Of a DNA stretch of 64,000 nt, positions 3,697 to 18,722 are shown piece after piece. Location: IMG/VR virus record IMGVR_UViG_3300046542_000227, positions 203,321-267,320 of that record; one strand, given 5' to 3'. The position numbers and the translations under genes were made by a program. Each line of letters opens with the position of its first letter. Within the stretch, counting starts at the first letter, position 1. The notes beneath the pieces are model-generated. The model saw only the letters and a list, made by a program, of their open reading frames with translations, was not told the origin of the DNA and did no database searches.

Positions 3697-3748
3697 CGAC
3701 ATAAAGCCCCTCCCATCGCGGGAGGGGCCTATGCCGCTTTTTCTTTTG
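3697..3748. terminator. Bidirectional CATA-hairpin-TATG element between convergent genes
   Basis: CGACATAAAGCCCCTCCC-ATCGC-GGGAGGGGCCTATGCCGCTTTTTCTTTT. Confidence 0.85.
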
Positions 3749-4267
3749 TTACGAGGTGACCCCATTCAATCCATTCTGCAATGCTCGCTCCGCAGCTGCT
3801 GCGGCCGAGTCCTTCTGACGAATGGTGTCTTCAGCCATGTCCAGAATAAATGCAGCGATTGGATAAGGGAGGTTCCAGAACTCAGTCAGTGAATAACCTT
3901 GTTCATGGATCCGGTACGTATGGTAACGACGAACCAAACTAAACATTGGCCCACCTTCCCAAGCGTTCTCCTTATCATGCATGGCCATCAGCGCTAGCGG
4001 GCGCATCGGGTCAGGGGCATTAATGTGATCGTAGATACCATAGTCAGTTTGATAAGCCATCAAACTAAGCTGAGCCGCGGCTGTTGGTCTTACGGCTGGT
4101 GACTCACGCAGCAGCTGATCGATAAGACCATACTGCTGCGCTTGCTTTAGACCGAATGTACCAAACAGGACGTGTCCGTTCTTGTCGTCCTCGTTGATAG
4201 AGAGACGACTGTAGCGGGCGTCGGTGTTCGTTACATGATGCGGCTGAGCTTCCGGCTGGCCAACATG
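3749..4267 (-). CDS. gp76-like reading frame; probable -1 frameshift extension of the gp77-like gene (tail/baseplate assembly chaperone 'T'-type segment)
   Basis: Frame is open from 4339 to the stop at 3749, with no ATG/GTG/TTG upstream of 4063. Contains GYSLTEFWNLPY, similar to T4 gp51/P2 gpE'-type motifs. Confidence 0.65.
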   Translation of the reverse strand, partial: HVGQPEAQPHHVTNTDARYSRLSINEDDKNGHVLFGTFGLKQAQQYGLIDQLLRESPAVRPTAAAQLSLMAYQTDYGIYDHINAPDPMRPLALMAMHDKENAWEGGPMFSLVRRYHTYRIHEQGYSLTEFWNLPYPIAAFILDMAEDTIRQKDSAAAAAERALQNGLNGVTS

Positions 4268-5916
4268 AAAAACTCCGCCAGTGGATCGACAGTGATCAGG
4301 TTCTCGAAACGCTCTTTGAACTTGGTCGCTGCAGGCGTGTTACAGACCGGGCAGTTGAAGGAGTTGATTGCAGTCATGGCAATCAGGCTGTCGTCGATAT
4401 ACTTCTCGACAGCGTCGTTGAATTCTTTGATGTGCTCATCGGCCGAGTAAACGTCAGACAGGATGTCAGCGATGAAGTCCTTCTCTTCCGAGAGAACCAC
4501 GTAGCCATCTGGCGCTTCTGGGTTGATGTCAACAATGGCTTTGATCCAGTGCGTGTATTCACGCGCAGCGGTGGACTCAGCCAGTTGTTCGATAAAGCGA
4601 GTACGGTTACGACCTTCAGGCGGTTCGTTGAATGCGCCTTGAGTCATTTCGATGATGCCGGTCAACCAAGCACGTCCGAGCTCTTCGTGATCCCAGACCG
4701 ACGGGCATTGCAACAGGAAGCCCATCTCGCCAATCTGCACCAGACGCTCACGACCATAGACGTGATGCGACTTGTACGTGGCCAGGTCTTCCTTGGTACG
4801 CGGTGCACGCGCATCGATACGGAAGGCCATATGGGTTTTCTGCCATGGAGTCAGACCGTTCATGTCGACCCACCACATGTTCACCACTTGCATCAGTTCT
4901 TTGGTGATATGGTTGCACTTGCCGATATCGGCGATGCATGGCGACGCGTACGGATAACCGGCTGGGTACAGAGTAGCAGCCAGACCCAGGATTACCGCAG
5001 GGATGTCACGGGTGTCGATCAATGGCTTGAGGTCAGTCGGCGTAGCAAACGAAACGTTCGCATTGCTGACGTGCTGCAAAGCAAAGTCAACCACGATGGT
5101 CTTGATGTAGTGGGCGACGTTAGAGAACGCCAGACCACGGGTTTCAGAACCTACCGATACTTTGACCTGTGCCACTTCCTGGTTCATCGCGGTCAGTTCA
5201 ACCAACGATGGGGCCTTGAAGCGCAGCCAGATACCCGAATGCCACAATGGCATATCAACGGTACCACCAACGCCCGCCTTACGGGTGACGTAGGACTTCA
5301 GCTCTTCACGGGTGTACTTGCCATCAGCAGCCAGACGCTGGACAGGAATACCACCACCGATGTGCTTGCCTTCGTGTTCAACCGTTTGACCCCAGTGCGA
5401 ACCTTCACGATGCAAGGCAGCAGTGTGACGGTCTGGATCGTTAACGATCTGACGGGACAATGCACCGAGCAGCAGACGCAGGTGAGGATCACCTTTGTCG
5501 TCCGGGATAAAGTCGGCAGTACGACCGATGGCTTCAGCCAGTTTGGTTTCGGATGTAATCATCCGTTCCATAATAGCCGAGCTGTGGTTCAGCACCTGGG
5601 TAACCGTTTCAACCGTTTCACGCAGGATCGCGACGCAGTCACTCAGGCTAGGCTCAGGCTGCTTATCAGGCAGTGGTTTGGTAACCGGGCGGGTAACCGT
5701 ATGGTTAGTGCCGGGTTGATCTGGCGTGAAGGGCTCCAGAGGAGGCAACTCTTCGTCAGGAGCATCCTGGATCAACTGCTGCACTTCAGCCTCACCAAGC
5801 GGTGGTGTGGCGATGTGTGGGTTGATCGGTGTTTCACCAGACGGCACAGCAGCGCCGGCAGCTGCCGGCTCCACTGCGTCGCCCTGACCGGCTTTCGGAT
5901 CATCAGGCAGTTGCAT
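4231..5916 (-). CDS. phiKZ gp77-like protein; putative baseplate hub/tail assembly chaperone
   Basis: 561 aa; PCIADIGKCNH and CPVCN cysteine motifs; ends ...DPLAEFFML; synteny. Confidence 0.7.
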   Translation of the reverse strand: MQLPDDPKAGQGDAVEPAAAGAAVPSGETPINPHIATPPLGEAEVQQLIQDAPDEELPPLEPFTPDQPGTNHTVTRPVTKPLPDKQPEPSLSDCVAILRETVETVTQVLNHSSAIMERMITSETKLAEAIGRTADFIPDDKGDPHLRLLLGALSRQIVNDPDRHTAALHREGSHWGQTVEHEGKHIGGGIPVQRLAADGKYTREELKSYVTRKAGVGGTVDMPLWHSGIWLRFKAPSLVELTAMNQEVAQVKVSVGSETRGLAFSNVAHYIKTIVVDFALQHVSNANVSFATPTDLKPLIDTRDIPAVILGLAATLYPAGYPYASPCIADIGKCNHITKELMQVVNMWWVDMNGLTPWQKTHMAFRIDARAPRTKEDLATYKSHHVYGRERLVQIGEMGFLLQCPSVWDHEELGRAWLTGIIEMTQGAFNEPPEGRNRTRFIEQLAESTAAREYTHWIKAIVDINPEAPDGYVVLSEEKDFIADILSDVYSADEHIKEFNDAVEKYIDDSLIAMTAINSFNCPVCNTPAATKFKERFENLITVDPLAEFFMLASRKLSRIM

Positions 5917-6445
5917 TGAGTTCGCTCTCCAGGATGCTGGTGTATTCTTTCTCTACGGTTTCAGCCAGCGAAACCAGCAGTGGCTGAATGCCGGATTCGT
6001 AGTGGGTAGCCAGCTTGTTGTAGCCGGTAGCCAGATCGAATACATCGGTGATCTCTTCAGCGCTTGGAGCACCCGACTTGTCTTTGTGGACTTCCCACAG
6101 CGACGCGAGGTTCTCGTTGTAGTTGGCGATATCGCCGCACAGCGTACCGAAGCTACGCTTGAAGCCTTCGGCGTCAGCCAAGTGCTTGCAGATGTTCGGC
6201 AGTTCTTGTTTGACCGGGATGACGAAGTTGCTGGTGCTGAGGATCAGACCGGCACACTCGCTGTACAGTTCGCGAAGGATGTCGTAGCCATCGGCGCCCT
6301 TGAGTACAGCTTCAGCGGTGAGGCTTTGCATGTCCTGGACTTGGCCAACGATTTCTTTTTGTTCGGTCGCCGGCAGAGTTGCGAAGGCTTCCAGTTTCTT
6401 TTGTTCCGGCACAGCAATGGCGCTACCGGCGATCAGCTCACTCAT
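5903..6445 (-). CDS. Hypothetical helical protein (gp78 position)
   Basis: AGGAG RBS; 14-bp overlap with the downstream gene. Confidence 0.8.
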   Translation of the reverse strand: MSELIAGSAIAVPEQKKLEAFATLPATEQKEIVGQVQDMQSLTAEAVLKGADGYDILRELYSECAGLILSTSNFVIPVKQELPNICKHLADAEGFKRSFGTLCGDIANYNENLASLWEVHKDKSGAPSAEEITDVFDLATGYNKLATHYESGIQPLLVSLAETVEKEYTSILESELNATA

Positions 6446-6472
6446 CCCGTTCTCCTAGGACATAATTTGACA

Positions 6473-6496
6473 ATGACATATATATTGCTTAATGCA
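6473..6496 (+). promoter_or_regulatory. Candidate phage early-type promoter
   Basis: ATGACATATATATTGCTTAATGCA aligns more loosely with four other TATAT-core motifs; AT-rich divergent intergenic region. Confidence 0.45.
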
Positions 6497-6556
6497 GTAA
6501 AATCCCACAGAAGAGTAAAACCCTATGGGTAACTTTTTTCGATAGAAGGTGATGAC

Positions 6557-7408
6557 ATGCAAGACATGTTCAAAGAACGCATGAATGCCGTGCTGCCGTT
6601 GGAACAGTTGGAACTGGGTGCGAGCATCCTGAGTCTCTTTGAAGACGTGGGCTTTACCTCTCCATACGAACCTCTTCAAGAGATAATGGAAGTCAGTACT
6701 TCGCTTATTGCGACTGACCAGTACGTGTCTCGTGTACTGACCTGTTTGTCCGACTCGATGGACGACCTGCTCAAAGCGTTTGGCGTGGAAGTAACTGAGT
6801 CCTGCCCGCTGCAATATAAGCTCGATGTAGGGACGACCCTGATCAAGCTGCCGAACTATTATTTGCCAGCGGAAGTGTTGGCTATTACCACCACTAGCTT
6901 CGACAATGAAGTGATCTTGGCTGAGCTGGTCATGCTCACTCAGGGCGTAATAGTAGAAGAGTCGTTGGAACACCTCTACGGCGTCGACGATGGGTTGATC
7001 CCGAAGCTGACCGCAGAGATGCAGAAGATGGCGGCCTACGACGAAGCATTCAATACTCCGCTGGACATGATCGACCTGGATCGTAAGCGGATCATCAACA
7101 TCAACCGTCTGCTGAAAGACGCCCGTGCTAAAGAGCATTTGGTTTGCGTCGGCGAACTGATCGAAGCTGGCGCCAAGATGGGTGCAGACTTTGAACCGTT
7201 GGTACAGCAATACGTCGAACAACTGACGATGCTTCCTGCGGATCATATGACCATCGAGCTCCTCGGCCTGGCCTTGTTCAGCAAACTCCCTGCTGAGCAA
7301 TGGATCGACACTGTGCAACACACAGCCGGGGAATTTACGGATCTGTTGTCCGACCATCGCAAGATCGAGATCGTGCTTAACGATTATCGAGTCTTCTTCG
7401 AGATGTGA
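6557..7408 (+). CDS. phiKZ gp79-like protein
   Basis: 283 aa acidic; GAAGGTG RBS; GTGA overlap with the vRNAP subunit gene. Confidence 0.7.
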   Translation: MQDMFKERMNAVLPLEQLELGASILSLFEDVGFTSPYEPLQEIMEVSTSLIATDQYVSRVLTCLSDSMDDLLKAFGVEVTESCPLQYKLDVGTTLIKLPNYYLPAEVLAITTTSFDNEVILAELVMLTQGVIVEESLEHLYGVDDGLIPKLTAEMQKMAAYDEAFNTPLDMIDLDRKRIININRLLKDARAKEHLVCVGELIEAGAKMGADFEPLVQQYVEQLTMLPADHMTIELLGLALFSKLPAEQWIDTVQHTAGEFTDLLSDHRKIEIVLNDYRVFFEM

Positions 7409-16043: not shown

Positions 16044-16475
16044 TCACCCCCGAAATGAAATATCACCGATGTAAGCCATGTTGTTTTGAGCACCATAGCG
16101 AATTGCCGCCGCCCTGACGAAGTTCCATTCAGGGATCGTCAAGGTTAGATTACCCGACTTGTACGCAAACATCGCGTAGTAACACATGCGGTCGATCTTC
16201 GAATACTTGATGTCGTAGATGTCATCATCCACGTCATCACTCTGCTGTGGGATCATGCTGTACGGACCCAGCGCATCACTAACCGAGTTTTGATCACCCA
16301 GTGTTTGTGCCACAGCCAGCATTTCAACGATCTCATTGCGCAGTTCAAAGATGGCCGCCCGACCTTTCCACGGACTGGCCACCCCTTGCTGCTGACACTT
16401 CATCGCTTCTTTAGCGACCTCACTGGCCTCTTCAGCCAACTTGCCTAAGAGGTACTGCACCCACGTCATGCTCAT
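16044..16475 (-). CDS. MazG-like all-alpha NTP pyrophosphohydrolase
   Basis: LLGKLAEEASEVAKEAMK...LRNEIVEMLAV (EExxE...ExxD-like pattern). Confidence 0.65.
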   Translation of the reverse strand: MSMTWVQYLLGKLAEEASEVAKEAMKCQQQGVASPWKGRAAIFELRNEIVEMLAVAQTLGDQNSVSDALGPYSMIPQQSDDVDDDIYDIKYSKIDRMCYYAMFAYKSGNLTLTIPEWNFVRAAAIRYGAQNNMAYIGDISFRG

Positions 16476-16851
16476 TTAACAGCTCCGCTAAGGCCCGGGC
16501 TTGTGATACCGGGGTAGTTGCAAAACGATCTGAGATCAATCCACCTGCCTCTGTAGCCTTAACCCGTAGCTCTGCGAACAGTTGAGGGTTTTCGTCTACC
16601 CAGCGACGCCACAGCTCCTTGTAGGCAGCATATAGGTCGATTGTAGGGTCAAGCGGTGGTTTACCTTTACCAATACGCCAGTCATCAACACCCAGATCAC
16701 CATAACCCTTAACACCGAGCTGGTAATGTTCCTCAATAGTAAACCCGTCACTAAGACGGGCTACTAATGCCGAGAAGCGACGGTCTCCTTTGGTGGAGAC
16801 TTCTATGCCGCCAAATCTTTCGAAGCGGAACTGGATGGACTGGCTGGCAGC
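16432..16851 (-). CDS. Unlisted conserved-looking phage domain with no usable canonical start; probable -1 frameshift extension of the DNA polymerase subunit
   Basis: Manual translation: ...RFGGIEVSTKGDRRFSALVARLSDGFTIEEHYQLGVKGY...WRIGKGKPPLDP...YKELWRRWVDENP...ISDRFATTPVSQARALAELLNE...; TGA at 16434-16432. Confidence 0.75.
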   Translation of the reverse strand, partial: AASQSIQFRFERFGGIEVSTKGDRRFSALVARLSDGFTIEEHYQLGVKGYGDLGVDDWRIGKGKPPLDPTIDLYAAYKELWRRWVDENPQLFAELRVKATEAGGLISDRFATTPVSQARALAELLNEHDVGAVPLRQVG

Positions 16852-18722
16852 TTTTTTCCTTTGTGTTCCAGATAGGCTTCCAAGATGCGATCCATCGACG
16901 GAGCATTCAGAACCTTCTGTGCTATCTCCACAGCATTAACCCGACCACCCGTTAGGTTCACCCCGAACTCACGCCGTATCGCTTCAGTGAGTCCTTGAAT
17001 CTGACAGAACTCCATCACCGTAGTTTCACGAGCGATGTTGAGAATCTGCGAGACGTTAGGGTAAGTCGATACAATGTCGAGGTCGGCTACGTGCGTGAAG
17101 ATTAGCGTCAGGTATTCCCGCATCTCTTCGACACAGGCCATCCCCTCAGCCGCAGCCATATACGACGGTAGCGTGACGATCCAGTCGTCATGTCCAATCA
17201 CGAACTTATCCAGTTCATGAGACATCTGGTCAGACGCTGTACCAATCACCGACTTCTGCGGACGGTTCAGATACCAGAAATGCATATCGTCGCAAAGACG
17301 TTTCGGGTTGGAGTTAAAGTTCTTAAAGTCCGAGTTCTTCGAATACATCGTAATCGACGAAGCCAAGTCTTTAGTCTTCTCATCCAACTGCTCCAAGCGC
17401 ACGCTGTCGACGATGTTATAAACACCGTAAACGATCTTGTGCTTGGCTTGCATCACTTCGTGCCAACGCAGACCGGTGAGGTGATCGGTTGGTTTGTATT
17501 TCAGCTTACCGAAGTCGTTACGGACTTCGAGGACGTCGCCGACCTTCACGTTTTCAGGAGTGATGTCCTTACGAGCGATGTCTTGCTCGTTCAAGCTGTA
17601 ATAAACGAAGCCACCTTTGCCTTTAGTCAGGTCATCGGCTTTATCGAGGAATGCTTGAATGTCACCCACCGCACTGATCTTGGACTCATAGTCACCATTG
17701 AGTTCCTTCTTCAGAATGCGGTCCAGGGCATAAGAGGGATCTTTACCGTTTGCCAGTCGAGTAATGCGATATACCGTCATGGCATCGATGCATTGGAAGG
17801 TAGCCGGATGGGTTACCCAGTTCCAACGGTCTTCCACGTTGATCGACATTACTTTACCAGAAGCGGTGGTCTTCTGTGTGTTGCCTTTGCGATAGTTGAA
17901 GTACTTGTATTTGTCCGGAACCGTAGGGTCACTGAACACCATGCGCAGATCGATACCTTCCTTCTCCAGAGCACGGATGATTTTGCTCATGTCGAAGTCC
18001 ATGTTCCAGAAGGCAAACCAATCAGGCTTCCATTCATGGAGCTTCTCGATGCAGAGCATAACCACTTGAGCTGGAGTGTCAGCGATCAACACTTCAATTT
18101 CAAGGCCACGTTCTTCGAGTAGTTCAGGGATCAGTTCTTTCGCAGTACGGTGCGTATCACCAATTGGATCATCGATGTCTGCGACCCAACGCTTGAGGTA
18201 AACCAGACGTACGTTCTTCTTGTGACTAACCGACATGCAGATGATGTCATCTGTACCATCAACTACGTCGGTCTCAATGTCACCACCACCAACTGTGTTA
18301 AAGCTGATGGTTTCTGGATACTTGGTACGGTACTCTGCTTTAGCACAGCACGCCGAGCTGACATCAGCTCCATAGACGTACGGGTTACGTTGCAGAACAC
18401 GTTGTTGCATATGGGGGCCACCGGTACCCATACCCAAGGTACGGGCGATGGACTTGACCAGATCGAGCTGCGTCGAGGAATACTCTTGCAGGTTGCTGGC
18501 AAATTCGTAGTCTTTCTTCTCTTCGTGGTTACGACGGCCTTTGTGGGTGATCCAGTAAGGACGCTTATAGTTCTCTTCAAAACGAAGACGGGGCACACGC
18601 CGCCCATCTTCCAAATGTACGACTTCTTTAATCACCAGCATGTCGCTGATGCCACGTTCTTGGTCTACAACGTAGGTAATGTGTTTCGCTTCAAAGCCGG
18701 TTGGTTTAACAATAGAGCTCAC
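16803..18722 (-). CDS. Split family-B DNA polymerase subunit (3'-5' exonuclease plus motif A), phiKZ gp82-like
   Basis: ExoI DIETD, ExoII WNMDFD, ExoIII YNIVD, PolB motif A DLDIVSTYPN; motifs B and C not seen. Confidence 0.85.
   Translation of the reverse strand: MSSIVKPTGFEAKHITYVVDQERGISDMLVIKEVVHLEDGRRVPRLRFEENYKRPYWITHKGRRNHEEKKDYEFASNLQEYSSTQLDLVKSIARTLGMGTGGPHMQQRVLQRNPYVYGADVSSACCAKAEYRTKYPETISFNTVGGGDIETDVVDGTDDIICMSVSHKKNVRLVYLKRWVADIDDPIGDTHRTAKELIPELLEERGLEIEVLIADTPAQVVMLCIEKLHEWKPDWFAFWNMDFDMSKIIRALEKEGIDLRMVFSDPTVPDKYKYFNYRKGNTQKTTASGKVMSINVEDRWNWVTHPATFQCIDAMTVYRITRLANGKDPSYALDRILKKELNGDYESKISAVGDIQAFLDKADDLTKGKGGFVYYSLNEQDIARKDITPENVKVGDVLEVRNDFGKLKYKPTDHLTGLRWHEVMQAKHKIVYGVYNIVDSVRLEQLDEKTKDLASSITMYSKNSDFKNFNSNPKRLCDDMHFWYLNRPQKSVIGTASDQMSHELDKFVIGHDDWIVTLPSYMAAAEGMACVEEMREYLTLIFTHVADLDIVSTYPNVSQILNIARETTVMEFCQIQGLTEAIRREFGVNLTGGRVNAVEIAQKVLNAPSMDRILEAYLEHKGKKLPASPSSSASKDLAA

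What the first reader, a model, noticed from the sequence alone, without database searches (positions are those of the whole stretch)
3749..4339. Candidate -1 frameshift joining the gp77-like and gp76-like frames: a G/GT-type tail-assembly chaperone in a jumbo phage
Seen (minus strand): the downstream frame is -1 relative to the 561-aa gene and is open from 4339 across that gene's stop (4233-4231). It has no ATG/GTG/TTG until 4063, so protein-like codons (...NGHVLFGTFGL...IDQLLRESPAVRPTAAAQLSL) lack a start. GAG TTT TTC (G_TTT_TTC, 4273-4267) lies 11 codons before the stop. A -1 slip would give a 722-aa product (...LAEFFHVGQPEAQ...). Established: long-tailed phages make G/GT chaperone pairs by -1 frameshifting, often at Phe-Phe U-runs, and the distal part carries YS..E...(L/M)P-like motifs (here GYSLTEFWNLPY). 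Caveats: the heptamer is imperfect, and the locus is not beside a tape-measure gene in this window.
Basis: partly seen in the sequence, partly recalled or inferred. Interest (0 to 1): 0.75.

Follow-up and report, generated by a model that had tools for sequence, protein, structure and literature searches.

The report
Conserved -1 frameshift in jumbo-phage gene
A core gene of nucleus-forming jumbo phages (the phiKZ gp77 family, needed for phiKZ growth) seems to be read two ways: most ribosomes stop, but some slip back one base on a run of U's and add a 172-residue tail, and this layout is kept in all 30 relatives examined and was not found described in the literature searched.

Summary
The 561-aa minus-strand gene (5916..4231) is a phiKZ gp77 homologue. 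A -1 frame, open from 4339 to 3749, encodes a conserved domain that has no ATG/GTG/TTG for 68 codons after GAG TTT TTC (4275-4267).

In 30 distinct junctions (window, 17 annotated phages of different genera, 12 metagenomic contigs) the domain always lies in the -1 frame. It always follows an in-phase N_UUU_UUY run that encodes an invariant Phe-Phe. The first Phe codon is TTT in 28 of 28 cases, against the genes' own codon preference.

None of the listed homologues is an in-frame fusion: 50 of the upstream protein, and the best 150 of 220 of the domain. Substitutions that are radical in frame 0 are silent in frame -1 before the 0-frame stop. Published phiKZ transposon data show no insertions in either part.

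A programmed -1 frameshift giving 561-aa and 722-aa isoforms is therefore strongly supported; ribosomal slippage is likelier than transcriptional.

The product is not a lambda G/GT-family chaperone. It is large, has no TAC Pfam match, and lies between helicase and RNA polymerase genes. Its predicted fold resembles the T4 gp51/gp26 baseplate-hub assembly chaperones, so a tail or baseplate assembly role is plausible but unproven.

A second conserved -1 site (A_AAA_AAG) sits in the DNA polymerase gene at 16857-16851.

The parts
4231..5916 (-). Frame-0 gene, 561 aa (P0001), a phiKZ gp77 / PhiPA3 gp074 / 201phi2-1 gp136 homologue; this is the short isoform
   Evidence: ORF and translation. PHROG 4585, E 2e-147, unknown function. 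tblastn to PHIKZ077, 34.6% identity, E 6e-85, and to 213 phage records. AF2 model pLDDT 83.7, pTM 0.84.
4267..4273 (-). Slip site G_UUU_UUC: P-site codon UUU at 4272-4270, A-site codon UUC at 4269-4267, encoding the invariant Phe549-Phe550
   Evidence: Sequence. An in-phase N_TTT_TTY occurs in 29 of 30 relatives and C_GTT_TTT in one. F549 and F550 are two of five invariant columns across 19 genera. The P-site codon is TTT in 28 of 28.
4231..4266 (-). Dual-coded overlap: the frame-0 tail MLASRKLSRIM plus its stop, read in frame -1 as HVGQPEAQPHHV
   Evidence: Both frames are about equally conserved here, 0.31 versus 0.30 pairwise identity. R->L and L->H changes in frame 0 are silent in frame -1.
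3749..4267 (-). Frame -1 extension: 172 codons (4267..3752) plus TAA at 3751-3749. It is an all-helical domain joined by a low-confidence linker, and it is the C-terminal part of the 722-aa long isoform
   Evidence: Translation. No start codon for 68 codons. The third-position substitution bias is 12/4/25, 11/5/27 and 17/7/27 in the start-less zone. PHROG 12109. phmmer gave 220 hits; the 150 listed are 65-180 aa. AF2 pLDDT 88.1, with residues 9-20 below 50.
4268..4339 (-). Upstream part of the open -1 frame, probably not translated in that frame
   Evidence: In L014 a stop lies directly 5' of the T-run, and in phiKZ the frame opens 12 nt before it.
5903..6445 (-). gp78-like gene (180 aa) overlapping the start of the 561-aa gene by 14 nt; same transcription unit
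   Evidence: ORF list. PHROG 14050. The same gene order occurs in all annotated relatives.
3706..3744 (.). GC-rich hairpin(s) between the convergent gene ends, terminator-like; no terminator or promoter match lies between the frame-0 stop and the extension
   Evidence: Sequence. Terminator scan. Pattern search.

Best explanation
The 561-aa gene and the start-less downstream frame are one recoded gene. Most ribosomes read frame 0 and terminate at 4233-4231, giving a 561-aa protein. A fraction slip back one base while decoding UUU-UUC (4272-4267). The A-site tRNA-Phe re-pairs from UUC to UUU, and the P-site tRNA-Phe re-pairs from UUU to GUU with one mismatch. These ribosomes continue in frame -1 to 3751-3749 and give a 722-aa protein with the same first 550 residues plus a linker and a 150-residue helical domain.

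Shown here:
- the frame relation, the slip motif and its synonymous-site constraint;
- coding selection on the start-less frame;
- the absence of in-frame fusions among listed homologues;
- the absence of transposon insertions in either part in phiKZ.

Inferred:
- the shift is ribosomal rather than transcriptional;
- both isoforms are needed in a set ratio;
- the protein is a non-virion assembly factor for the baseplate hub or tail. Its residues about 200-550 have a fold like the T4 gp51/gp26 hub assembly chaperones, and the extension would add a second binding surface, as the T part does in lambda gpGT.
For: Frame conservation. The conserved domain lies in frame -1 in all 30 distinct junctions. 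Across the 18 annotated genomes, chance would give about (1/3)^17.

Slip motif. An in-phase T_TTT_TTY occurs in 17 junctions, G/A_TTT_TTY in 12 and C_GTT_TTT in 1. H_HH.U_UU.Y heptamers and the U_UU.C and U_UU.U tetramers are among the most shift-prone motifs in E. coli (PMC4066793).

Synonymous constraint. The P-site Phe codon is TTT in 28 of 28, although TTT is mostly the minority Phe codon in the same genes. The naive product of the per-gene fractions is 10^-16. The Phe-Phe pair accounts for two of only five invariant columns across 19 genera.

Shift window. In L014 the -1 frame opens one base before the run. The earliest frame-0 stop is 8 codons after it.

Coding without a start. There are 68 start-less codons in the window, with a third-position substitution excess. 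First possible starts are scattered 8-85 codons after the slip and are mostly TTG or GTG.

Reading of frame -1 before the frame-0 stop. CGG->CTG and CTC->CAC are radical in frame 0 but silent in frame -1.

No fusions. The 50 homologues of the upstream protein are 318-572 aa. The best 150 of 220 homologues of the domain are 65-180 aa.

Not an assembly error.

Importance in phiKZ. TraDIS Table S2 of 10.1101/2025.11.23.690004 shows 0 insertions in PHIKZ077 (1602 bp) and 0 in PHIKZ076.4 (243 bp). The neighbouring genes 076-076.3 have an insertion index of 0.013-0.025.

Function lead.
- Foldseek hits to 'baseplate hub assembly protein/chaperone, T4-like' have E 1e-4 to 1e-2 and TM by target 0.5-0.57 over residues about 200-550.
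- 48 of 100 ESM-feature neighbours are PF12322 clusters.
- An Atlas shape match reaches a 542-aa viral cluster that carries PF12322.
- T4 gp26 and gp51 are PF12322 members and are listed as hub assembly chaperones.
- No chain of any solved structure matches either part.
Against: - There is no direct evidence of the 722-aa protein. No RNA run was listed, and no proteomic data were examined.
- The window's heptamer is imperfect: G at position 1 gives a P-site mismatch.
- No conserved stimulatory RNA structure was found downstream (z from -2.4 to +1.3, consensus -1.9 kcal/mol, no covariation) or upstream. No conserved SD-like element was seen.
- After the slip the two frames are about equally conserved, so the ratio of products cannot be guessed.
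- In RP31, 201phi2-1 and Eowyn a start codon overlaps or abuts the frame-0 stop, which would allow coupled re-initiation in those phages.
- T6-T8 runs in many relatives could also support RNA polymerase slippage.
- The functional assignment rests on predicted folds only. There is no Pfam hit. hhalign against the gp51 family gives 17-42% probability, over a CxxC motif only.
Confidence: 0.75

Rival explanations
1. Transcriptional slippage. The phage or host RNA polymerase adds one extra U on the T-run, so a subset of mRNAs carries the two frames fused. The proteins made are the same as with ribosomal slippage.
For: Runs of T6-T8 occur in 24 of the 30 relatives. UUUUUUU is avoided in E. coli genes, possibly because of such slippage (PMC4066793). 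Chimalliviruses transcribe with their own atypical polymerases, whose fidelity on homopolymers is not known to me.
Against: - The window and five other lineages keep only T5, which is short for productive slippage.
- What is conserved is the codon phase of TTT TTY at the 3' end of the run, not its length. The run's 5' end varies over all three phases.
- No conserved nascent-RNA hairpin lies next to the run.
- No RNA data could be obtained.
Confidence: 0.15
2. Two ordinary genes. The downstream domain is translated on its own from an internal or non-canonical start, or by termination and re-initiation. In this view the -1 phase and the U-run are by-products of a conserved Phe-Phe.
For: Annotators call a separate small gene in most genomes. 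RP31 (TGATG) and 201phi2-1 (TTGA) have start codons overlapping the stop, and Eowyn has a TTG 3 nt after it.
Against: - The window has 68 conserved codons with no ATG/GTG/TTG, and phiKZ has 85. Possible starts are scattered and lack SD sequences.
- The called proteins begin at query positions 1-73 of the domain.
- The frame is -1 in 30 of 30.
- The TTT choice at the first Phe codon is not explained by the protein sequence.
- Frame -1 is under selection upstream of the frame-0 stop.
Confidence: 0.07
3. A broken gene or a sequencing artefact: a once-continuous 720-aa gene that lost a base in this genome.
For: Homopolymer runs are classic sites of sequencing and mutational indels.
Against: The same split occurs in all 30 relatives and in four independent metagenomes. 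No intact in-frame version appears among the listed homologues. Both parts are under purifying selection, and neither tolerates insertions in phiKZ.
Confidence: 0.01
4. The frameshift is real, but the protein has nothing to do with tails. It would act in replication, transcription or nucleus biology, as its neighbours (helicase, RNA polymerase subunits, DNA polymerase) suggest.
For: Gene neighbourhood. There is no sequence-level link to PF12322. Conserved Cys pairs (C327, C334, C522, C525) would also suit a nucleic-acid-binding zinc site. The same window holds a second -1 site, in the DNA polymerase gene.
Against: Three partly independent fold or feature searches converge on T4_baseplate and on nothing else. 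Chimallivirus genomes scatter their structural genes, so neighbourhood is weak evidence. gp79 and gp80 next door are virion proteins.
Confidence: 0.3

Closest known systems
Lambda gpG/gpGT and the conserved tail-assembly-chaperone frameshift of long-tailed phages (Xu, Hendrix & Duda 2004; P2 E/E+E' in myoviruses)
   Same: A -1 slip occurs near the 3' end of a morphogenesis gene. It gives a minor, C-terminally extended isoform that shares the whole N-terminal part. The frame-0 stop follows soon after. By my recollection the lambda site, like this one, needs no strong RNA stimulator. The arrangement is conserved where the sequence is not, and an in-frame fusion is never seen.
   Different: - The upstream part is 561 aa, not about 100-150.
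- There is no Pfam TAC family in either part. ESM features give TAC_19 and GpE only at a chance-level score of 0.80.
- The gene is not placed between the tube and tape-measure genes.
- The slip motif is U_UUU_UUY throughout the family.
T4 gp51 and gp26/gp26' (Pfam PF12322 T4_baseplate), baseplate hub assembly chaperones
   Same: - The predicted fold of residues about 200-550 matches members of this family, as do ESM features.
- Both families have two conserved cysteine pairs far apart in sequence.
- gp51 is required for assembly but absent from the virion. Likewise no solved-structure chain matches this protein, and 201phi2-1 gp136 carries no mass-spectrometry note while its neighbour does.
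- T4 gene 26 also makes two nested products (26 and 26').
   Different: - No sequence-level match was found: Pfam none, hhalign 17-42% on a CxxC only.
- This protein is twice as long, with an extra N-terminal region of about 200 residues and a helical insertion.
- T4's two products arise by internal initiation in one frame, not by frameshifting.
- The extension has no detectable counterpart in gp51.
E. coli dnaX tau/gamma and IS3-type orfA-orfB transposases (classical bacterial -1 frameshifts)
   Same: An X_XXY_YYZ heptamer is read by bacterial ribosomes and gives two products from one gene.
   Different: Those sites use A_AAA_AAG with an upstream SD and a downstream hairpin or pseudoknot; none is seen here. 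In dnaX the shifted product is the shorter one.

Membership tests
Lambda-type G/GT tail assembly chaperone pair | [quoted passage not shown] | tested here: met
   Frame -1 in 30 of 30 junctions, with a slip motif 8-37 codons before the frame-0 stop.
Lambda-type G/GT tail assembly chaperone pair | Position between the major tail (tube) gene and the tape-measure gene | tested here: not met
   The neighbours are a helicase, small ORFs, a gp78-like gene, a gp79-like gene and an RNA polymerase beta subunit. The phiKZ tape-measure candidate, orf181, is far away.
Lambda-type G/GT tail assembly chaperone pair | Small upstream protein (about 100-150 aa) of a recognised TAC family | tested here: not met
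   The upstream protein is 561 aa. There is no Pfam family for either part, alone or across 32 and 42 homologues.
Lambda-type G/GT tail assembly chaperone pair | The shared part binds the tape measure and the extension binds the tube protein | not testable with these tools
   No partner was identified and no complex prediction was run.
Pfam PF12322 T4_baseplate (T4 gp26/gp51) | Match to the family HMM above its gathering score | tested here: not met
   No hit at E<=10 for 32 family members or anywhere in the 267-kb genome. T4 gp51 and gp26 themselves score 178 and 216 bits.
Pfam PF12322 T4_baseplate (T4 gp26/gp51) | Profile-profile similarity over the domain | tested here: inconclusive
   hhalign gives 17% probability over 58 columns and 42% over 11 columns around CPxC.
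Pfam PF12322 T4_baseplate (T4 gp26/gp51) | Shared fold | tested here: met
   The evidence is predicted models only. Foldseek BFVD and AFDB hits named baseplate hub assembly protein, chaperone or subunit have E 1e-4 to 1e-2, probability about 1 and TM by target 0.5-0.57. An Atlas shape hit has TM 0.46/0.47 to a cluster with PF12322. A direct comparison with the T4 gp51 model could not be run.
Pfam PF12322 T4_baseplate (T4 gp26/gp51) | Needed for assembly but not a virion component | tested here: inconclusive
   No insertions in phiKZ TnSeq. No chain of a solved structure matches. No virion proteome table was examined.
Programmed -1 ribosomal frameshift site | In-phase X_XXY_YYZ heptamer allowing both tRNAs to re-pair | tested here: inconclusive
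   The heptamer is perfect (U_UUU_UUY) in 17 of 30 relatives. In the window only the A-site tetramer U_UUC is perfect, because the full heptamer is G_UUU_UUC. U_UU.C is the second most shift-prone tetramer in E. coli.
Programmed -1 ribosomal frameshift site | Stimulatory element (downstream structure or upstream SD) | tested here: not met
   No conserved structure or covariation was found. By my recollection such an element is not obligatory, lambda G/GT being an example.
Programmed -1 ribosomal frameshift site | Trans-frame protein detected | not testable with these tools
   No RNA or proteomic data were available for this phage.

The most novel reading that the evidence does not exclude
All Chimalliviridae carry an obligatory, never-fused -1 frameshift in a core gene required for growth. 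It sets the ratio of two isoforms of a highly diverged gp51/gp26-like hub assembly factor. This would be the long-missing functional equivalent of the G/GT tail chaperone in nucleus-forming jumbo phages, and it would have evolved in an unrelated protein family. Together with the second conserved site in the DNA polymerase gene, it would show that these phages use host-ribosome slippage systematically. It might even be tunable by their ribosome-binding proteins.
Probability: 0.4. Interest if true: 0.75.

Novelty: new variant of a known kind. Interest (0 to 1): 0.68.

Why it matters
Genome annotation. The gp77 family is a core gene of nucleus-forming jumbo phages, is required for phiKZ growth, and has no assigned function. 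Its downstream half is mis-annotated or missing in the public records examined: phiKZ lists only the last 81 codons, as PHIKZ076.4. Recognising one recoded gene corrects the annotation of more than 200 phage genomes.

Function. The fold link to T4 gp51/gp26 gives a testable hypothesis of baseplate-hub or tail assembly.

Recoding. For the recoding field it adds a deep, family-wide -1 site that works on U_UUU_UUY without an evident stimulator. For phage engineering it warns that edits, transposon designs or codon optimisation across the Phe-Phe site would destroy an isoform the phage needs.

Tried and rejected
- Pfam on both parts, alone and across 32 and 42 homologues: nothing.
- PHROGs: families of unknown function only.
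- hhalign of the body against the gp51 family: weak, CxxC only. hhalign of the extension against gp51: nothing. My idea that the extension corresponds to the C-terminal part of gp51 is therefore dropped.
- Atlas shape search of the extension: nothing. ESM features of the extension place TAC_19 and GpE only at the chance-level score of 0.80.
- Downstream stimulatory RNA: single folds and a 10-sequence consensus show no conserved structure.
- Upstream hairpin: suggested by the terminator scan at 4292-4275 but not conserved. Hairpin-assisted polymerase slippage is therefore dropped.
- RNA-seq: no run listed. Only DNA contigs could be laid.
- Profile search with a wider alignment reached no further relatives.
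- PF12322 search of the whole genome found no hit, but the tool's control genomes gave none either.
- Literature: no open paper mentions PHIKZ077, PHIKZ076.4 or a programmed frameshift in Chimalliviridae. The 'gp77' and 'gp136' found in papers belong to other phages' numbering.
- No complex prediction was run, because no binding claim is made.
Full report
**Observation**

The window is the last 64 kb of a complete 267,320-bp virus record with terminal repeats, assembled from a rhizosphere metagenome.

- On the minus strand, ORF 5916..4231 encodes 561 residues and ends with TAA at 4233-4231.
- The frame one base back has a stop at 4342-4340 and then stays open to TAA at 3751-3749. Its first ATG/GTG/TTG is TTG at 4063.
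- GAG TTT TTC occupies 4275-4267, with 11 sense codons before the stop.
- A -1 slip there joins 550 and 172 residues into 722.

It is not an assembly error. Contigs from a wetland and two soil metagenomes cover 4192-4354 without any indel.

**Relatives**

The closest isolate is Pseudomonas phage Noxifer (76.6% DNA identity). The 561-aa protein is the homologue of phiKZ gp77, PhiPA3 gp074 and 201phi2-1 gp136. tblastn finds it in 213 phage records, on hosts including Pseudomonas, Erwinia, Salmonella, Serratia, Ralstonia, Klebsiella, Vibrio, Burkholderia and Xanthomonas. It is therefore a core chimallivirus gene.

I read the junction in three sets of sequences, 30 distinct junctions in all:
- the window;
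- 17 annotated phages of different genera;
- 12 further distinct IMG/VR contigs.

In all 30 the conserved downstream domain lies in frame -1 of the gp77-like gene. In all 30 a run of 5-8 T's lies 8-37 codons before the frame-0 stop. Its 3' end is always in the same codon phase, TTT TTY:

| Heptamer | Junctions |
|---|---|
| T_TTT_TTT | 12 |
| G_TTT_TTT | 7 |
| T_TTT_TTC | 5 |
| G_TTT_TTC (the window's type) | 4 |
| A_TTT_TTC | 1 |
| C_GTT_TTT | 1 |

The distance from the slip to the -1 stop is nearly constant, 149-179 codons.

**Is the U-run selected as nucleotides, not only as Phe-Phe?**

- In an alignment of 19 sequences spanning genera down to 17% identity, only five columns are invariant. 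Two of them are F549 and F550.
- The first Phe codon is TTT in 28 of 28 sequences that have Phe there. Elsewhere in most of these genes TTT is the minority codon: 0 of 14 in Xoo-sp14, 1 of 16 in L014 and 4 of 15 in the window.
- The naive product of the per-gene TTT frequencies is 10^-16. Shared ancestry inflates this figure, but synonymous sites are saturated between most of these genera.
- The run is the only T5 in the window's gene.

**Is the start-less frame translated, and from where?**

- The 56 codons between the frame-0 stop and the first possible start show the signature of a coding frame. Differences from three relatives fall 12/4/25, 11/5/27 and 17/7/27 on codon positions 1/2/3 of frame -1. 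This matches the pattern in the rest of the domain.
- Across the 30 junctions the first ATG/GTG/TTG lies anywhere from 8 to 85 codons after the slip (median 32). It is mostly TTG or GTG, and only 4 have even a weak SD-like word.
- Gene callers accordingly start the 'small gene' at query positions 1 to 73 of the domain.
- The -1 frame is closed just 5' of the run in several relatives. A TGA abuts the run in L014, and phiKZ opens 12 nt before it. The earliest frame-0 stop is 8 codons after the run, so the shift is confined to about 30 nt that contain the run.
- Inside the overlap, the window reads AGC CGG AAG CTC AGC while L017 and L020 read AGC CTG AAG CAC AGC. This is R->L and L->H in frame 0, but QPEAQ is unchanged in frame -1. 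Frame -1 is therefore under selection before frame 0 ends, which termination-reinitiation cannot explain.
- Both frames are about equally conserved over the first 8 codons after the slip, 0.31 and 0.30 identity. That is what a dual-coded stretch serving two products should show.

**No fused versions**

- The word-indexed search with the 561-aa protein returned 50 proteins of 318-572 aa.
- An exhaustive phmmer search of 1.84 billion cluster representatives with the 173-aa extension gave 220 hits. The best 150 are all 65-180 aa.
- An in-frame fusion needs only one inserted base in a homopolymer. Its complete absence among the listed proteins argues that making only the long form is selected against.

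**Experimental support from the literature**

In the phiKZ transposon screen of Chan et al. (bioRxiv 10.1101/2025.11.23.690004, Table S2):
- PHIKZ077 has 0 insertions in 1602 bp.
- PHIKZ076.4, the last 81 codons of the -1 frame, has 0 insertions in 243 bp.
- The four small genes just beyond, on the other strand, have insertion indices of 0.013-0.025.

PHIKZ076.4 is the last gene of its unit, so polarity does not explain its result. For 243 bp the expectation is only about 3 insertions, so on its own this is modest evidence.

**Mechanism**

U_UU.U_UU.Y belongs to the high-efficiency class H_HH.U_UU.Y in E. coli. U_UU.C and U_UU.U are the second and third most shift-prone tetramers (Sharma et al. 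2014, PMC4066793). The window's G_UUU_UUC keeps the perfect A-site tetramer, with one P-site mismatch.

I found no conserved stimulator:
- Downstream folds have z-scores from -2.4 to +1.3.
- A 10-sequence consensus has -1.9 kcal/mol and no compensatory pair.
- A weak hairpin just upstream in the window is not conserved.
- No SD-like word recurs upstream.

By my recollection the lambda G/GT site likewise works without a structure, at a few per cent. The efficiency here is unknown.

Polymerase slippage adding one U would give the same protein, and it is plausible for T7-T8 runs. Ribosomal slippage is the better-supported reading, at about 3 to 1. Six lineages keep only T5, and it is the codon phase of the run's 3' end that is conserved, not its length.

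**What the protein is**

Sequence methods are silent. There is no Pfam family, and both PHROG families are of unknown function.

The AF2 model of the 561-aa form is confident (pLDDT 83.7, pTM 0.84). It matches nothing in the PDB.

Against predicted viral and cellular structures the chimalliviral homologues come first. After them comes a long series of 220-310-aa proteins named baseplate hub assembly protein, chaperone or subunit (T4-like). These have E 1e-4 to 1e-2, probability about 1 and TM by target 0.5-0.57, over model residues about 200-550.

Two further searches agree:
- ESM-feature neighbours of residues 195-561 are 48 of 100 clusters carrying PF12322 T4_baseplate.
- An Atlas shape search finds a 542-aa viral cluster with PF12322.

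T4 gp51 and gp26 are the founding members of PF12322. They are listed as hub assembly chaperones, and gp51 is absent from the particle (PMC3004832).

Both families keep two distant cysteine pairs: C327, C334, C522 and C525 here, and C85, C88, C185 and C186 in gp51.

Profile-profile comparison does not confirm homology (17-42%, CxxC only). The genome has no sequence-detectable PF12322 member (low power). I therefore rate 'gp51/gp26-like hub or tail assembly factor' at roughly 50-60%.

The extension is a confident all-helical domain (pLDDT 88) ending in a 37-residue helix. It is joined by a stretch of low confidence, and its fold matches only its own family.

The frameshift stands. Membership of the G/GT family fails on three counts:
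- size: 561 aa rather than about 100-150;
- family: no TAC Pfam match in 42 extension homologues, and TAC-like ESM neighbours only at a chance-level score;
- position: the neighbours are a helicase, small ORFs, gp78-like, gp79-like and RNA polymerase beta genes.

The logic may still be the same: a morphogenesis chaperone made as a major short form and a minor extended form. T4 gene 26, of the family this fold resembles, also makes two nested products, though by internal initiation.

**Novelty**

No open-access paper in the library mentions PHIKZ077 or PHIKZ076.4. None combines Chimalliviridae with a programmed frameshift. Subscription literature was not searchable.

I class this as a new variant of a known kind: a G/GT-like recoding strategy in an unrelated core gene family of jumbo phages.

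**A second site in the same window**

A scan of the whole genome for long start-less frames behind gene ends ranked this locus third. First came another locus in the window:
- The 639-aa DNA polymerase (exonuclease-domain) gene 18722..16803 carries an in-phase A_AAA_AAG at 16857-16851.
- A 138-codon -1 extension follows the slip site, with no start codon until near its end.
- That domain is 54-75% identical in Pseudomonas chimalliviruses.
- It is again in frame -1 in Noxifer (A_AAA_AAG) and in 201phi2-1, PS119XW and PA7 (C_CCA_AAG at or one codon before the stop).

This was followed up only in part.

Noticed in passing
window 16435-18722 (minus strand); slip site 16851-16857: A second candidate programmed -1 frameshift. 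The 639-aa DNA polymerase (exonuclease-domain, phiKZ gp82-like) gene has an in-phase A_AAA_AAG 16 codons before its stop. A conserved 138-codon -1 frame follows the slip site with no start codon until near its end. Noxifer (A_AAA_AAG) and 201phi2-1, PS119XW and PA7 (C_CCA_AAG next to the stop) have the same domain in frame -1. The domain also occurs in Rhizobium, Achromobacter, Sphingomonas, Delftia and Bacillus phages. No Pfam match.
   Followed up: partly
G000:C1:125503-126129 (minus strand), outside the window: The genome scan lists a 208-aa ORF whose -1 frame runs 140 codons past its stop with no start codon for 70 codons. No classical heptamer lies in the 10-nt overlap.
   Followed up: no
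window 3700-3744: The GC-rich hairpin region between the convergent gene ends also fits other places of the source assembly's contigs in the laid reads (table 8). This suggests a repeated terminator-like element. Within the window the exact hairpin occurs once.
   Followed up: partly
L006:3913-4428 (phiKZ): In phiKZ only the last 81 codons of the 171-codon -1 frame are annotated, as PHIKZ076.4. In kmuB and several other phiKZ-like records nothing is annotated there. Simmy50's annotated 'gene' starts upstream of the T-run.
   Followed up: yes
BFVD hits: Several non-chimalliviral T4_baseplate-like hits have UniProt accessions adjacent to those of 50-90-aa ORFs that weakly match the C-terminal helices of the extension. 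Examples are Leptospira phage LE4 (A0A343LED6/LED7), G4KKH9/G4KKI0, I1VX76/I1VX77 and A0A7G8AM66/AM65. A two-part arrangement may therefore exist beyond Chimalliviridae.
   Followed up: no
L033 (Haymo), L034 (N1M2), L010 (SPN3US), L031 (JM-2012): In these distant relatives the frame-0 tail after the slip is much longer (20-37 codons) than the 8-16 seen elsewhere, so the short isoform has a lineage-specific C-terminus.
   Followed up: no
L030:3803-4429 and 5229-6882 (T4): T4 gene 26 is annotated with a nested product, 26' (C-terminal 95 aa). T4 genes 27 and 28 overlap by 56 nt.
   Followed up: no
L015:3005-3036: One metagenomic relative has Val-Phe (GTT TTT) instead of Phe-Phe at the slip site. 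It keeps a T5 run but moves it one codon phase. It is the only exception among the 30.
   Followed up: partly
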